Positions 28,947-35,540 are shown, numbered from the stretch's first letter. The stretch is 64,000 nt of DNA from Macrostomum lignano (GCA_002269645.1 NIVC01001809.1:124001-188000), one strand, 5' to 3'. The notes: generated by a model not told the origin, from the letters alone. Program-made: numbers and translations.

Positions 28947-31075
28947 TGATGGGTTCGGCCTCTTTAAGACTATAGCTTCGGGCCTCAGAACTCAGAAATG
29001 AATCACTAAGAGCTCTGGCCTCTCACTCCTGTCAGATGGTCAGCCCCATGGTAGCTAGATTGTGGGCGAGCAGCAAGGTCCTATAGCTAGGAGAAGACAG
29101 CGAGAGACAAGCAGGGAGAATTTGAAATGTAGAAATATTAGTTAATCCGCAGATTAACTAACTCGCTGCCACCAGTCCGTGCGCCCCGGCTCACCAAACC
29201 GGAGCTATCGAAATCGGAATTCCGACTAGAGGGACACTGCACTTACCTGCCATCTAGTGTATTTTAGCTGTCTAAATCTCGAAGTCATAGCCGAATAGAA
29301 GGGACGCTGCTGGGACAAGATCGCATTGGCCATGCAGGGACAGAGAGGACTTCTGCAGGGGATTATTGCGCTGGCGAGCCTCTATACACTACTGAAAGTA
29401 CTATTTCATTACCAAATTCCCAGAAGTACATGTATAAGTACACGTAACTGCACGCTTTTGGCACTAAATGTGTTAACACGTCGACGGATAGCGAGGATGT
29501 AGATGTATTGTCACTTTTGGAGACCTTCAGACTCGTTTATTTATCCCGTTTTAGCCGCTTAGCTGCCTGAGACCGCGCGTAAGCGCCAGTCTGGCACTTA
29601 ATTCGCATGCTTATCATGATTTCTGAGATCGACTGATTGACTGGGAACTGTGCCGCTTCCGGTTCACTCTGACCCCTGCCTCTAGATTTAGCCGCTTATT
29701 TCAGCTGGCATTGCGAAAAAGAAAGAAAACGCTAAGTCTTTAACTTCCAGATTTAACTTTCTCACTCAATACGCAATCCTAAACACTTTAGATAGAGTTA
29801 GAGCGAATGGCTACTTTTAATTTTAACTGACACTTCTGCCTCGAGATTGGCCCACAAAAGCAAGTAAGCAAAAGTGCAAATCCTATTATTAGACTACCTA
29901 GGAAGGGGTCAGACAAAGGGTGCACCCAGTTAAGCAGGTCAAGAAAGCCTCTCACCAAACCAATCAGAGGACCTATCTGCCGGTAGCCAAGGAATCCACA
30001 GAGACCGAAGCGCTCAGACAGGATGCTGCTGCTGATCTTAACTGACGCGTGACACTGTCGCTCTTCACTTGCCGGTTGCTGTCGCTGCTCTTTGTTCACG
30101 GTCGAGAATACTGATGATACCCCTCAGGGGAAACTTAGCTGTTGAAGCCGAAACTGCCGGGGGAAGGGAGGTCGGGCATCAAAGACGCAGCAGAAGCCGA
30201 AGGGGCCGTCCAAGAACCGATTTCCGAAGAAGGTTTTCAAGCGCGGGTCGAGTTGCTGCCTTTTATAGCTCTCGCGTGGCCGATTTGTTATAACACACGC
30301 CGAATTTTCTGATTGGCTGAGAGCTTTTGTTAAAATTGGCGCCGAATTTTCTGATTGGTCGAGCCGGGGGAAGTCAGGTCGACTCTGATTGGCTGAGCTC
30401 AAGACCCCAAAACCCACCCCACCAGGTGGCCTTCAGACCCCCAGGAAGTTGACAGGTGCGGTCATAAATCATAAGCAAAACATAATAAAAGTCACTTGTC
30501 TAGACATCCTGGGGCCAAAAGTGACAGCAAAACACCCATAAATCAAAGGAGAAATTTACAGAGCGAGTGGGAAGAAAGCTGGAAAGACCTCTTTGACCCA
30601 GCCAGGCTGGAGCCAAAAGTGACAGCTAGACCGTCATAAATCACTGAAAACAGTGAAAAAGCCGCAAATCTGAGGGTCAGAATGGGGTTGAAAACATTCT
30701 TCCGAGACTTAGAGTCGCCTGTCTAGACTGTTAGAGGTCAATCCGTCTCAAACCCAGACAGTCTGACCTTCAAAGACGCGTAAACAATCCAAAATTAGAA
30801 TCCTAAGAGAAGTACATTGAGTATTTAACATAATTAATAGTAATGGCATAAATTAGTATAGAACTTAGCCTAGATGAGAGAATGGAGAGAAATTCCTAAG
30901 CTCGCCTACTGACAGTAGGGAAAAGCGCATCGAAGCAAAATGCGCGGTTCTAAGATTGAAAAAAGGTGCGTCCTCAACATAAACTAGTAATCGGATCGCT
31001 AATAGGTTTAATAGATCTATCGTCCGAGCCAGACGGATTTGAAATTAGCTCGCGAGTCGAATTTGGACTGATTAT
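28947..31075 (-). other. Unclassified ~2.1-kb non-coding repeated unit, copy 1 (promoter, intron, structured 3' part)
   Basis: Homologous to 33499-35540; CCAAT boxes 30312-30392, TATAAAAG 30260-30267, GT-AG intron 29087-29246. Confidence 0.7.
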
Positions 31076-31226
31076 CTATACTGTTGTTAGTTGTATCTTC
31101 CTCATCCTAAGTTCTCCAAGCTTCCAGTAAAACTGCCTCTGCTGCTCTTTTCCTATTATTTCGTAGATTCTCTGCATTTCGGCAAAGGCTCTACGTCTTT
31201 TTTCTTTCTTGTTTTTTGCTTTTTTG

Positions 31227-31665
31227 GCGGTTTCACGTACTATTGAACTCTCTTCAAAGTTCTTTTCAACTTTTCCTCACGGTACTTGTCTGCTAATCGG
31301 ACTCGTGCCAGTACGAGCTTTTTAGCCTTGGATAGTTTAGCACCCGCTTTGGCCTGCATTCCCAAACAAGCCGACTCGTAGGTAAACCCCAGGAATCAGT
31401 CGGAGCGTTTGTACGGGTCTTACACCGTCTCTACGGGTCTTACACCCTCTCTGGGCTCGAGCCACAATCAGGTGGACTTGAGACGCCTAGACTGATACGA
31501 AGGGCTACCTTAACACCACATTTCCCGTTGACTTGCGCCAAGGGATTTGGTGTTGGGCTCTTCCCCGTTCACTCGCCCTTACTATAGAGGAATCCTTGTT
31601 AGTTTCTTTTCCTCCGGTTGATAATATACCTAAATTCAGCGGGTAATCACGTCTGATCCGAGGTC
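31227..31665 (-). rRNA. Orphan 28S rRNA 5' fragment (pseudogene), probably with ITS2 remnant on its 5' side
   Basis: Minus strand GACCTCGGATCAGACGTGATTACCCGCTGAATTTAG...GGAGGAAAAGAAACTAACAAGGATTCC...GAGTCGGCTTGTTTGGGAATGCAG...GAAAAGAACTTTGAAGAGAGTTCAATAGTACGTGAAACCGC. An internal duplication (TACGGGTCTTACACC twice) and indels in conserved helices indicate decay. Confidence 0.93.
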
Positions 31666-32800: not shown

Positions 32801-33498
32801 ATGTGTCAGAGAAGCAAACTGCATTGGAGTCCCTCATCTGTGCGTGTCGTCGGCACGGCGACAGGCGTGGCATCCCACCGTAGCCTTGTACTTCGGTCAT
32901 GGCGTAGCTTTGGGCAATTGTATGCCTCGTCTGTAAAATGCAAGATGCATACCTTCCACTTCATCTGCCACAGCTTCTCGAGAGATATGGCTCGTAACTC
33001 CAGCATGCTATGGACTGATTCTTCGGAAACTGCATGGTACATGCGAATCGGGATGCCATCTTCGTTGCCTGAGGTACCAGTGCTGGTACAGGTCGCCGCA
33101 CAGCAGTCTTCGCTTGTATATTTTAACTCTTCGATATTTGCGAGCACTCGGTCTTCATGCGTTCTTCCTTCAGCAGCCAAATTTTGACAATTGTTTTTAC
33201 TTCTTTAAATGAAAACAAAATAGCGTACTTGCAAGGGAGAAAAGTTAAACAATACTCCTTGCTTAGCTCTAATTTCTCATTGGAAAGCCATGGTGAACCC
33301 CTACTAGTAGGAAGTGGCTATATTCGCACGGTACCGTATGAATAATTTTGCCACTATTCGTACGGCAATTTCGCGCAAATTTAAAATTCAACTTAGCGTG
33401 GTACGTAGTGCTCGTCAATGGGGTCTTTCATTTAAGCTTATTGTCAATGAAAACAGGCGTAGCAATGTTATTTTAGTGTTAACTATAGTGTATAATTT

Positions 33499-35540
33499 GA
33501 TGGGTTTCGACCTTCCGGCCCCCTTGTGGGGAAGCTTTCGGGCCTCAGGTCTCAGAAATAAATCAATTAGAGTCCTGGCCCCCCACTCCTGTCAGATGGT
33601 CAGCCCCATGGTAGCTTGATCGTGTGGCGAGCAGTCTAGGTCCTATAGCTAAGAGAGGGACAGCGAGAGACGAGCAGGGAGAATTTTGAAACTAGAAATT
33701 AGCTAATCCGCAGAGATCAACTAACTTGCTGCCACCCGTGCGCCCTGGCTCACCACACCGGGACTCTCGAAATCGGGCTTCCGACTAGAAGGGGCTTTGT
33801 ACTTACCTGCCAACTAGTGTCTTTTTGCTGTCAATCTCGAAGTCATAGCCGATGTTAAGGGACACTGCTGGGACTTGATCGCATTGGCCATGCAGGTACA
33901 GAGGGGACTTGTGCAGGGGATTCTTGCGGTGGCGAGACAATGGGGTAGCTACATGTACTATTACATTGCTAAATACGAAGAACTGTACTTTTGGCCTTCA
34001 ACGCGCCAACTAGCCTCTCCTAGCGCTGATGATAGGCTAACTTGAACTTCAGAGACCTCGCATGATTCATTACCCGAGCCGCTTGGCGAACCTAGAGTAC
34101 ATCTCTGGCGCCGATTCTGCACTACTGGCAGTTTCGCTAACTGATTCGATAGATTGATCGACTGAGAACTGCATTGCCATTGGTCCACTGTGACCGGCGC
34201 CTACTAGCTTAGCTTCTCATCTGAGCCATCGGCGAACAAAGAAATAAAACCGATAAAAATAACTGTCAGATTTAACCTTCACCTCAGATCACTTCACACT
34301 TCAGATTGAATTGGAGTTTTAGACTACTAGCAGTATTATTGAATGTCTTCTGCCTCAGCAACAGCACTACTGAACAAAAAGAGCAAAAGTGTGCGCCTAA
34401 TTCAGCTACTGAAACAGGGGACAGATAGGGAATCACCCAATCAAGCAAGTCCAGATAGCCTCTCACCCAACCAATCAGAAACTCAACAGCTGGAGACCAG
34501 GTAAATCCACAGTGACCGAATCGGCTTGATGCTCTGCAGCTGTAGACTCGGGATGATGCTGTCACAATCTTCGCTGTTAGCTAGCAGGTGATGCTCTCCA
34601 CTTGATGTTCGCTGCTGATGACCGGGGGACTCGTCCTTGATGATGAGGGGGGAAGTCGCAATCCGGGGATCAAGAAATCGCCCGGGCTCCGGGAACCAGA
34701 AATGTCGGGAAGGTTCCTTCGCGGGAGAGCCGGTTCCGAGCAAGTTGGAGTCCGTGCGGGCCGAAAACACCGGTTTAAATAGCCGCCAACTGGACCGCAG
34801 TTTGTTATAATGGAACACGTCGATTCTGATTAGCTGAGCCGATTTTTTAAAATGGGCGTCGAATTTTCTGATTGGCTAAGCTTGTTGCTACAGAATGCTA
34901 AGTTGCTAAGAGATCCTATCAGTTCCCTCGGGGTCGTAAAAACATGTACAGGTGCGGCCATAAATCAATCAAAATCGCAACTAAATGATTTATGCCTTTT
35001 CTCGTAGAATTGACAAAATTTAATGAAAAAATATACATTAGAAAGCTCCTATTAAATAGAAAGTGAAGAGAATGAAGAGAAATCGCTAATCGCTAACCCC
35101 AAAGTACTTTTAGGGGTAAAACGCATAGCTGTCAAAGCTGTCACACGCTTGAGTTAACACGAACAATCGGCCCTGACCTCATAAATCTTGATGGCCTGTC
35201 AAAATGATGAGAGAAAAGCTATCGCCCGCATCCCCTCAGACCATCTGGCGCCCGCCTTAACACTCAGTGAGGCGCAGGTGGCTGTCAGACCAGCTTCGAA
35301 AGCGATGATTTATGATCCAAAAAGCTGCGCCTATGTTATTATGACTACTAGTATGACCAAACATTATATCTAGTATAGATTCTATTCCAATTCGCAGAAA
35401 AAGGATAAAAATGCCCATTTCCCACTGTTAGTAGGCTAGTAAGTTTAGAGCCCATGTGCTAGCGCGGGATTTGGAAAAAAGTGCGTCCTCATCAATAAAC
35501 GTAAACGAACACCATAAAATAGCTCGTACGAGCTTTGAAT
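33499..35540 (-). other. Unclassified ~2.1-kb non-coding repeated unit, copy 2
   Basis: Homologous to 28947-31075; intron 33649-33806, TATTTAAA ~34774-34781, CCAAT at 34871. Confidence 0.7.

What the first reader, a model, noticed from the sequence alone, without database searches (positions are those of the whole stretch)
28947..35540. Duplicated ~2.1-kb non-coding transcription unit with Pol II promoter, conserved intron and no long ORF
Seen: two diverged copies (28947-31075, 33499-35540, minus). Each has tandem CCAATCAG boxes, a TATA, and about 1 kb downstream a CAG|GTAAGT...CTAAT...pyrimidine tract...TAG intron (160 and 158 nt). Similarity is much higher around the intron and the 3' 400 bp than elsewhere, which suggests selection on RNA features. 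It sits among R2 and 28S relics. Candidates: a structured lncRNA or small-RNA host family, or the intron-containing leader/pseudo-LTR of an unrecognised retroelement (Penelope-like elements have such introns). This is the least explained structure in the window.
Basis: partly seen in the sequence, partly recalled or inferred. Interest (0 to 1): 0.75.

Follow-up and report, generated by a model that had tools for sequence, protein, structure and literature searches.

The report
Two solo LTR-like retrotransposon remnants
The two 2-kb "non-coding genes" are most likely leftover terminal repeats (solo LTRs) of two related retrotransposon families in the flatworm Macrostomum lignano, one sitting cleanly inside a dead R2 element; this is ordinary, apart from a convincing small intron inside the repeat.

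Summary
Two collinear minus-strand units (A 30979-28947, B 35494-33498) share NF-Y-type CCAATCAG boxes, a TATA-like box 712/713 nt from the 5' end, a consensus 160/158-nt intron and an 85-89% identical 3' module. The rest is only 35-60% identical.

They are not a host gene duplication. Homology starts at TG(T/A)TGAG and ends at CCCATCA, close to the LTR integrase-recognition consensus TGTTRNR...YNYAACA. It is absent from both flanks. Unit A lies between two TTTA copies inside an R2 reverse-transcriptase relic. With A and one TTTA removed, the R2 frame aligns without a gap across the junction to hundreds of R2-like proteins.

There is no ATG-initiated conserved ORF, no long terminal inverted repeat, no Rfam family and no tRNA. 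Folding stability is not above shuffled sequence, and the "intron" is no better conserved than its flanks.

The host is Macrostomum lignano, where LTR retrotransposons are reported as 21% of the genome. Best reading: solo LTRs of two related families, possibly of the long-LTR Gmr1/Osvaldo lineage, with a variable U3 and a conserved 3' portion. LTR membership is not proven: no other copies or paired copies could be retrieved, and B has no clear target duplication.

The parts
28947..30979 (-). Unit A, 2033 bp, candidate solo LTR. 5' end TGTTGAGGACGCAC, 3' end CCCATCA.
   Evidence: Alignment and motif positions. Homology to B stops at both ends. Clean insertion in an R2 ORF.
33498..35494 (-). Unit B, 1997 bp, second diverged copy. 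5' end TGATGAGGACGCAC, 3' end CCCATCA.
30980..30983 (-). Upstream copy of the TTTA target-site duplication of unit A.
   Evidence: Flank sequences printed. Frame continuity.
28943..28946 (-). Downstream copy of the TTTA target-site duplication of unit A.
30262..30979 (-). A: putative U3. T-rich (34% T), with three RRCCAATCAG (NF-Y-type) boxes at 30392, 30358 and 30316. Two of them lie in a 42-bp repeat that also carries GAAAATTC. TATAAAA at 30267-30261.
34774..35494 (-). B: putative U3. 32% T. CCAATCAG at 34875-34868, degenerate CTAATCAG at 34833-34826, TATTTAAA at about 34781-34774.
29923..30012 (-). A: conserved mid island with an inverted CCAAT box (CTGATTGG), about 270 nt downstream of the TATA box.
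   Evidence: 78% over 92 bp; sequence.
34434..34523 (-). B: conserved mid island, the counterpart of A's.
28977..29378 (-). A: conserved 3' module, putatively the R/U5 end of the LTR.
33537..33936 (-). B: conserved 3' module.
29087..29246 (-). A: predicted 160-nt intron. CAG|GTAAGT donor, CTAAT, 27/34 pyrimidine tract, TAG acceptor.
33649..33806 (-). B: predicted 158-nt intron.
27200..28942 (-). Context: the R2-type reverse-transcriptase relic into which A inserted, downstream half. It is degenerate, with stops and frameshifts.
   Evidence: PDB R2Bm 8ibw, E = 3.3e-32.
30984..31190 (-). Context: the same R2 relic, upstream half (region before the RT domain).
   Evidence: Collinear alignment to R2-like proteins across the junction.

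Best explanation
The two units are solo long terminal repeats (LTRs), or at least integrase-type terminal repeats, of two related LTR-retrotransposon families of Macrostomum lignano.

Proposed layout of each LTR:
- A variable, T-rich U3 of about 715 bp. It ends in a Pol II promoter built from NF-Y-type CCAATCAG boxes and a TATA-like box.
- A long transcribed part of about 1.3 kb (R plus U5).
- A last 410 bp that is the best-conserved segment and holds a small leader intron.

Shown:
- The units are discrete and collinear, with TG...CA ends.
- A is a clean insertion flanked by a 4-bp duplication inside an R2 relic.
- There is no coding capacity, no long inverted terminal repeat and no known RNA family.

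Inferred:
- Each solo LTR arose by recombination between the two LTRs of a full element, which leaves the original target duplication.
- The high similarity of the 3' module reflects the usual stronger constraint on R/U5 (integrase end, leader functions), or exchange between families. It does not reflect selection on a host RNA.
- The promoter and the intron worked in the parent element and may still give a short non-coding read-out transcript.

Assignment to the long-LTR Gmr1/Osvaldo lineage is a guess, based only on LTR length, T-rich U3 and 4-bp duplication.
For: 1. Boundaries. Homology begins exactly at TGTTGAG (A) / TGATGAG (B) and ends exactly at CCCATCA. Flanks are unrelated: z = 1.2 and -0.9, against 8-36 inside the units. 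The published LTR end consensus is TGTTRNR...YNYAACA (PMC3601003). A's 5' end fits it exactly. B's 5' end and the shared 3' end each differ at one position.

2. Insertion. A is flanked by TTTA on both sides. After removing A and one TTTA, the R2 ORF reads ...SIKPISDPITSL-VNPINIDEVHWAIRDFGKTAAGPDG in one frame.
- This sequence aligns without a gap across the junction to P0003 (E = 1.1e-30, query 2-186).
- It does the same for most of the listed R2-like proteins.
- It also aligns to Bombyx R2, starting 3 residues before the junction.

3. Architecture is conserved despite sequence divergence: 712 vs 713 nt from the 5' end to the TATA box, 889 vs 845 nt to the 3' module, and 432 vs 439 nt for the module.

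4. The pattern 'U3 variable, R/U5 conserved' is the general rule for LTRs (PMC3601003).

5. Other classes fit worse. No inverted repeat beyond 5-7 nt at the ends. No tRNA-like part. No Rfam hit. No ATG ORF.

6. Host. The window is M. lignano.
- LTR retrotransposons make up 21% of that genome (PMC5730564).
- 137 curated families are described, 40 of them in the Gmr1/Osvaldo clade (PMC12801592).
- Ulysses, which I place in the Osvaldo lineage from memory, has 2-kb LTRs (PMC3136932).
Against: - Only two copies could be examined. No copy number, no paired copies around a gag-pol core, and no primer-binding site or polypurine tract next to either unit.
- B has no matching target duplication: TTAT upstream, AATT downstream. 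A TTAT lies 2 nt further on.
- No conserved AATAAA. A has one at 29541; B has none at the matching place.
- With the predicted start site, R plus U5 would be about 1.3 kb, which is unusually long.
- An intron wholly inside an LTR is uncommon.
- The 3' end is ...ATCA rather than the consensus ...AACA.
- The abrupt rise from about 50% to about 87% identity could instead reflect gene conversion between neighbouring copies 4.5 kb apart.
Confidence: 0.6

Rival explanations
1. A mobile element of another class: a non-autonomous DNA transposon (for example Ginger-like, with TGT... ends and 4-bp duplications), or a tyrosine-recombinase element that integrates at a short TTTA core. In this reading the 2-kb unit is the whole element rather than a solo LTR.
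For: - Discrete ends and a 4-bp repeat at A.
- Ginger1 inverted repeats start with TGTNR (PMC3601003).
- An RT/RNase H relic with no recognisable integrase lies 3 kb away.
- B lacks a clean duplication.
Against: - No terminal inverted repeat beyond 5-7 nt. The best local score between the ends is at shuffle level.
- No transposase or recombinase remnant inside the unit.
- An internal Pol II promoter pointing along the element, followed by a leader, is the layout of an LTR.
- A stitched tyrosine-recombinase-like translation from the neighbouring relic gave no Pfam hit.
Confidence: 0.13
2. A host, or domesticated, Pol II-transcribed spliced non-coding RNA gene family. The 3' 410 nt is the functional RNA part, and selection explains the uneven conservation.
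For: - NF-Y/TATA promoter motifs and a consensus intron that is very unlikely by chance.
- Promoter, mid island and 3' module are conserved while the rest has drifted.
- One hairpin in the intron changes only to G-U pairs, and one stem shows an A-U to G-C swap.
Against: - Unit A is an insertion with a target duplication inside an R2 ORF. At least one copy therefore arrived by transposition.
- Ends match LTR integrase signals.
- No thermodynamic signal.
- Intron and exons are equally conserved.
- No conserved polyadenylation signal at or after the 3' end.
- With two sequences, the covariation evidence is negligible.
Confidence: 0.1
3. The pseudo-LTR or leader of a Penelope-like element, which can carry introns, or the promoter-bearing 5' UTR of a non-LTR element.
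For: An intron inside a terminal repeat is known for Penelope (my recollection, not checked here). The units lie among non-LTR relics.
Against: - No hammerhead ribozyme or any other Rfam family, even at E <= 5.
- No Penelope-type RT/GIY-YIG ORF follows either unit. The R2 ORF around A is interrupted by the unit, not led by it.
- B is followed by an unrelated THAP/P-element-like relic.
- The two downstream flanks are unrelated.
Confidence: 0.05
4. The two LTRs of one old element: B as the 5' LTR, A as the 3' LTR, and 30980-33497 as the internal part.
For: Same orientation, 2.5 kb apart.
Against: - The LTRs of one element start identical and diverge evenly. Here identity is about 87% in 410 bp and 35-60% elsewhere.
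- The interval holds a THAP relic, a 28S fragment and the upstream half of the R2 relic whose downstream half follows A.
- No primer-binding site after B and no polypurine tract before A.
- A has its own TTTA duplication.
Confidence: 0.02

Closest known systems
Solo LTRs of Ty3/Mdg4 (gypsy) retrotransposons with long LTRs: the Gmr1/Osvaldo lineage, e.g. Ulysses of Drosophila virilis with 2-kb LTRs
   Same: - About 2 kb long, with TG...CA ends close to TGTTRNR...YNYAACA.
- 4-bp target duplication at unit A.
- T-rich variable U3 with a TATA promoter, and a better conserved 3' part.
- The clade is abundant in M. lignano: 40 families (PMC12801592).
   Different: - No internal gag-pol partner or second LTR was found.
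- No conserved AATAAA.
- Very long predicted R plus U5.
- An intron lies inside the repeat.
- Clade assignment is untested, because no coding sequence is linked to the units.
Heat-responsive LTR promoters of M. lignano (Mlig-id115|Mag and others; Ustyantsev et al. 2025, PMC12801592)
   Same: Same host. LTR promoters with stress-type motifs upstream of a TATA box. The units carry GAAAATTC dimers directly after the CCAATCAG boxes.
   Different: The published families have canonical three-unit heat shock elements (nGAAnnTTCnnGAAn). Units A and B have none. The repeated motif here is the NF-Y CCAAT consensus.
Penelope-like element pseudo-LTRs
   Same: A terminal repeat that may hold an intron, in a non-coding leader.
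   Different: No hammerhead ribozyme, no adjoining Penelope RT/GIY-YIG ORF, and integrase-type TG...CA ends with a 4-bp duplication.
ERV9/LTR12-type LTRs, whose U3 has tandem repeats with CCAAT (NF-Y) boxes (my recollection, not checked here)
   Same: Tandemly repeated NF-Y sites upstream of a TATA box drive the LTR promoter.
   Different: Unrelated host and element. This is a resemblance in promoter logic only.

Membership tests
LTR of an integrase-type LTR retrotransposon (solo LTR) | Ends 5'-TG...CA-3' with short inverted repeats close to TGTTRNR...YNYAACA | tested here: met
   A: TGTTGAG...CCCATCA. B: TGATGAG...CCCATCA. Consensus from PMC3601003. One mismatch at the 3' end, and one at B's 5' end.
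LTR of an integrase-type LTR retrotransposon (solo LTR) | Flanked by a 4-6 bp target-site duplication | tested here: inconclusive
   A: TTTA on both sides, and the empty site restores a gap-free R2 alignment. B: TTAT vs AATT, no match at the exact ends.
LTR of an integrase-type LTR retrotransposon (solo LTR) | U3-R-U5 layout: TATA promoter, then a polyadenylation signal inside the repeat | tested here: inconclusive
   A TATA-like box sits 712/713 nt from the 5' end in both units. AATAAA is present only in A (29541), with no conserved signal.
LTR of an integrase-type LTR retrotransposon (solo LTR) | Elsewhere in the genome, the same repeat occurs as a direct pair around gag-pol, next to a primer-binding site and a polypurine tract | not testable with these tools
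   No M. lignano genome search was available. No further copy in the window or in L001. Two metagenome pattern scans, one viral pattern scan and the protein-word search were empty.
LTR of an integrase-type LTR retrotransposon (solo LTR) | No long terminal inverted repeats and no coding capacity of its own | tested here: met
   Ends are not complementary beyond 5-7 nt. All frames are broken or lack an ATG.
Penelope-like element pseudo-LTR | Hammerhead ribozyme in the repeat | tested here: not met
   No hammerhead or other ribozyme family at E <= 5.
Penelope-like element pseudo-LTR | Repeat adjoins a Penelope-type RT (with or without GIY-YIG) ORF | tested here: not met
   A is flanked on both sides by one R2 ORF. 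B is followed by a THAP/P-element-like relic.
Structured non-coding RNA gene | Folding more stable than shuffled sequence, and/or compensatory base changes | tested here: not met
   z = +0.46, +0.12 and +0.47. 2 of 102 pairs are compensatory, on an alignment of only two sequences.
Spliced Pol II transcription unit | Promoter, splice donor, branch site, pyrimidine tract, acceptor, and transcript evidence | tested here: inconclusive
   The sequence signals are present and statistically rare. No RNA data were available, and there is no conserved polyadenylation signal.
Protein-coding gene | ATG-initiated ORF conserved in one frame | tested here: not met
   In the 3' module all six frames are about equally similar and carry stops. 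The single frame open in both copies (111 and 98 codons) has no ATG. No homologues for any frame.

The most novel reading that the evidence does not exclude
The repeat is an LTR (or LTR-derived mobile unit) that carries a genuine, spliced intron wholly inside its transcribed R/U5 part, driven by an NF-Y/TATA promoter. Solo copies would then act as dispersed, self-contained, spliced non-coding RNA genes, and the conserved 3' 410 nt would be kept by selection on that RNA rather than by retrotransposition needs alone.
Probability: 0.12. Interest if true: 0.5.

Novelty: new member of a known kind. Interest (0 to 1): 0.22.

Why it matters
Mostly it removes a false lead. The "least explained structure in the window" is a transposon remnant, not a new class of RNA gene.

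It gives two curated LTR-like sequences for a repeat-rich model flatworm, and a clear case of nested insertion: an LTR inside an R2 copy that sits outside the rDNA.

If the intron is real and spliced, it would be a tidy example of an LTR-internal leader intron. The NF-Y-driven promoter might also be useful for M. lignano transgenesis. That would be of modest interest to people who work on transposable elements and flatworm genomics.

Tried and rejected
- Known RNA families. Rfam at gathering thresholds over the whole window, and at E <= 5 over 28500-36000, found only the 28S fragment. ARAGORN found no tRNA.
- Protein coding. A six-frame comparison of A against B showed no preferred frame in the 3' module. 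The shared open frame in the mid island has no ATG. A concatenated six-frame query found no homologue among 5.8 billion proteins.
- Structured RNA. Folding z-scores are near zero on both strands. RNAalifold shows almost no covariation.
- Heat-shock promoter, as in the published M. lignano LTRs. There are only two-unit GAAnnTTC motifs and no canonical three-unit element.
- Hammerhead split across the unit ends. B has TGATGAG at its 5' end and GTCGAAAC near its 3' end. A lacks both, the spacing cannot form the three stems, and Rfam is silent. Rejected as coincidence.
- DNA transposon. No terminal inverted repeats.
- LTR pair of a single element. Rejected by the identity profile and by the R2 continuity.
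- Finding more copies, all empty:
  - two metagenome pattern scans and one viral pattern scan;
  - seven exact-product look-ups for window ORFs;
  - the first search with the R2 empty-site protein in the word-indexed database.
- The one related locus retrieved, L001 from GCA_002269645.1, does not reach the units and holds no copy.
- The bacterial promoter/terminator scan is not meaningful for this eukaryotic sequence.

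
Full report
**What is there**

On the minus strand two units align collinearly: A at 30979-28947 (2033 bp) and B at 35494-33498 (1997 bp).

BLASTN finds three islands:
- a 3' module, 84.8% over 408 bp;
- a mid island, 78% over 92 bp;
- a promoter block, 79% over 78 bp.

Between the islands identity is only 35-60%. Each inter-island segment still aligns far better than shuffled sequence (z = 8.0, 12.4 and 36.3). The 520 bp on either side do not (z = 1.2 and -0.9). 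So homology covers the whole unit and stops sharply at both ends.

The layout is kept almost to the base:
- 5' end to TATA-like box: 712 vs 713 nt;
- TATA to 3' module: 889 vs 845 nt;
- 3' module: 432 vs 439 nt.

No other copy exists in the window.

- CCAATCAG occurs three times in A. Two of these lie in a 42-bp repeat. It occurs once, plus a degenerate copy, in B. With its flanks (AGCCAATCAGA) it matches the NF-Y site consensus as I recall it.
- TATAAAA (A) and TATTTAAA (B) follow.
- The intron is exactly as described, 160 and 158 nt.
  - The two CAGGTAAGT donors are the only ones on either strand of the 64-kb window.
  - Two of the three strong pyrimidine-tract acceptors on the minus strand lie 158-160 nt behind them.
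  - The donor-acceptor pair is therefore not a chance match, although nothing here shows that it is used.
- There is no coding capacity.
  - In the 3' module all six frames are about equally similar and broken by stops.
  - The one frame open in both copies (111 and 98 codons, mid island) holds no ATG.
  - A six-frame protein query found nothing.

**Why it is a mobile element and not a duplicated host gene**

The homology starts at TGTTGAGGACGCAC (A) / TGATGAGGACGCAC (B) and ends at CCCATCA in both. These are TG...CA ends with a 5-7 nt inverted repeat and nothing longer.

The sequence around A is a degenerate R2-type reverse transcriptase. Its best solved relative is Bombyx R2, E = 3.3e-32.

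A is bracketed by TTTA on both sides. Joining the flanks after removing A and one TTTA gives one reading frame...DRSIKPISDPITSL-VNPINIDEVHWAIRDFGKTAAGPDG....

An exhaustive HMMER search with this empty-site protein found 645 relatives.
- The best (P0003, E = 1.1e-30) aligns to query residues 2-186 with no gap at the junction between residues 70 and 71.
- Most of the listed hits also span it.

Unit A is therefore a precise 2033-bp insertion with a 4-bp target duplication.

**Which kind of element**

- The ends fit the integrase-recognition consensus of LTRs, TGTTRNR...YNYAACA (PMC3601003). A's 5' end fits exactly; the 3' end has one mismatch.
- That paper also states that R and U5 are generally better conserved than U3. 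That is the pattern seen here.
- The region upstream of the TATA box is T-rich (32-34% T). The same paper notes this for Sushi and Gmr1-type LTRs.
- The window comes from Macrostomum lignano. An intronless ion-channel ORF is 99% identical to BOX15_Mlig022208g1.
- In that genome LTR retrotransposons make up 21% of the DNA (PMC5730564). 137 families are curated, 40 of them in the Gmr1/Osvaldo clade (PMC12801592).
- LTRs of 2 kb are known from Ulysses (PMC3136932).

A solo LTR, left by recombination between the two LTRs of a full element, keeps the original duplication, as A does. I therefore read A and B as solo LTRs of two related families (confidence 0.6).

**What does not fit, or is missing**

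- B has no matching duplication at its exact ends: TTAT vs AATT.
- There is no conserved AATAAA.
- The predicted R plus U5 is very long.
- An intron inside an LTR is unusual.
- No paired copy, primer-binding site or polypurine tract could be examined. None of the collections open to me holds the M. lignano genome in searchable form.
- The sharp step from about 50% to about 87% identity could also come from gene conversion between the two neighbours.

- Identity is 88.5% in the upstream 'exon', 86.4% in the 'intron' and 89.1% in the downstream 'exon'.
- The 434-441 nt module folds no better than dinucleotide shuffles on either strand: z = +0.46, +0.12 and +0.47.
- RNAalifold finds 2 compensatory pairs among 102.
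- Rfam has no match, even at E <= 5.
- One perfect 10-bp hairpin in the intron (TTAGTTAATC-TGCG-GATTAACTAA) changes in B only to G-U pairs. This is compatible with an RNA stem on the minus strand, but it rests on two transitions.

**Other classes considered**

- Penelope-like pseudo-LTR: no hammerhead, no Penelope ORF next to either copy.
- DNA transposon: no inverted repeats.
- Tyrosine-recombinase element: no supporting domain. A stitched candidate from the neighbouring RT/RNase H relic gave no Pfam hit.
- The two LTRs of one element: excluded by the identity profile and by R2 continuity across A.
- Heat-shock promoter, as in the published M. lignano LTRs: only two-unit GAAAATTC motifs, no canonical element.

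**Verdict**

The "non-coding transcription unit" is best explained as a pair of solo LTR-like retrotransposon remnants, a new member of a known kind. Its one mildly unusual trait is a well-formed intron inside the repeat. A genome-wide copy search and RNA-seq junction reads would settle both the class and the intron.

Noticed in passing
window 31262-31643 (-) and 30984-31260 (-): A fragment of the 5' end of 28S rRNA (model positions 24 to about 420, preceded by ITS2-like sequence) runs through an A-rich linker straight into the middle of the R2 ORF relic. This is not the normal R2 target site in 28S. It looks like a chimera, for example template switching of the R2 enzyme onto rRNA, or a rearrangement.
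   Followed up: partly
window 23335-26156 (-): A retroelement relic.
- A 200-aa ORF with a SAP domain and a CCCH-like zinc knuckle.
- Then RT (YLDD) and RNase H.
- No integrase domain was seen.
- The sequence after RNase H looks tyrosine-recombinase-like by eye (DIRS/Ngaro type), but a stitched translation gave no Pfam hit.
   Followed up: partly
window 32439-33180 (-): Directly downstream of unit B lies a THAP zinc-finger ORF (Pfam E = 2.6e-5). It is followed by a stretch weakly like the C-terminal part of P-element transposase (E = 0.039). This is probably an internally deleted P/THAP9-like transposon relic.
   Followed up: partly
window 26350-27106; also 21502-21785, 22251-22436 and, inverted, 9139-12133: A 23-bp satellite (TTTACATGACGCTTCTATGATTG)n sits between the R2 relic and the SAP/RT relic. 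Related arrays occur elsewhere in the window on both strands.
   Followed up: no
window 57500-59900; 63400-63930 and 7768-8151; 36941-37387: Further simple arrays.
- A 12-bp satellite (GGTGTCTATTGT)n of about 2.4 kb.
- (ACAG)n-type arrays present in inverted orientation 55 kb apart.
- A 15-bp minisatellite that reads as long open frames on both strands (TMASL.../RDAIV...), which are spurious ORFs.
   Followed up: no
L001 (NIVC01000217.1:695354-717957) vs window 36992-53293: The GenBank Mlig_3_7 contig matches this part of the window at only about 92-97%, except for 2.26 kb at 99.96%. It also carries an extra upstream copy of the segment equal to window 40164-44479, which includes the ion-channel gene. 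This fits the redundant, hidden-polyploid assembly described for this species. The window is a different haplotype, homeolog or assembly.
   Followed up: partly
window 29791-30123 (-) and 34287-34580 (-): The same reading frame is open in both units over 111 and 98 codons across the mid island, with conserved residues (RFG.CGF...LIG.VRG.LDLL.WV.P), but without any ATG. It is either chance or the ghost of an old coding exon.
   Followed up: partly
window 37638-38720 (+), 51654-52811 (+), 42468-44561 (+): Three apparently intronless ORFs: two with a concanavalin-A-like (Laminin_G_3) domain, and a 697-aa ion-transport protein. They are the only likely host genes near the units.
   Followed up: no
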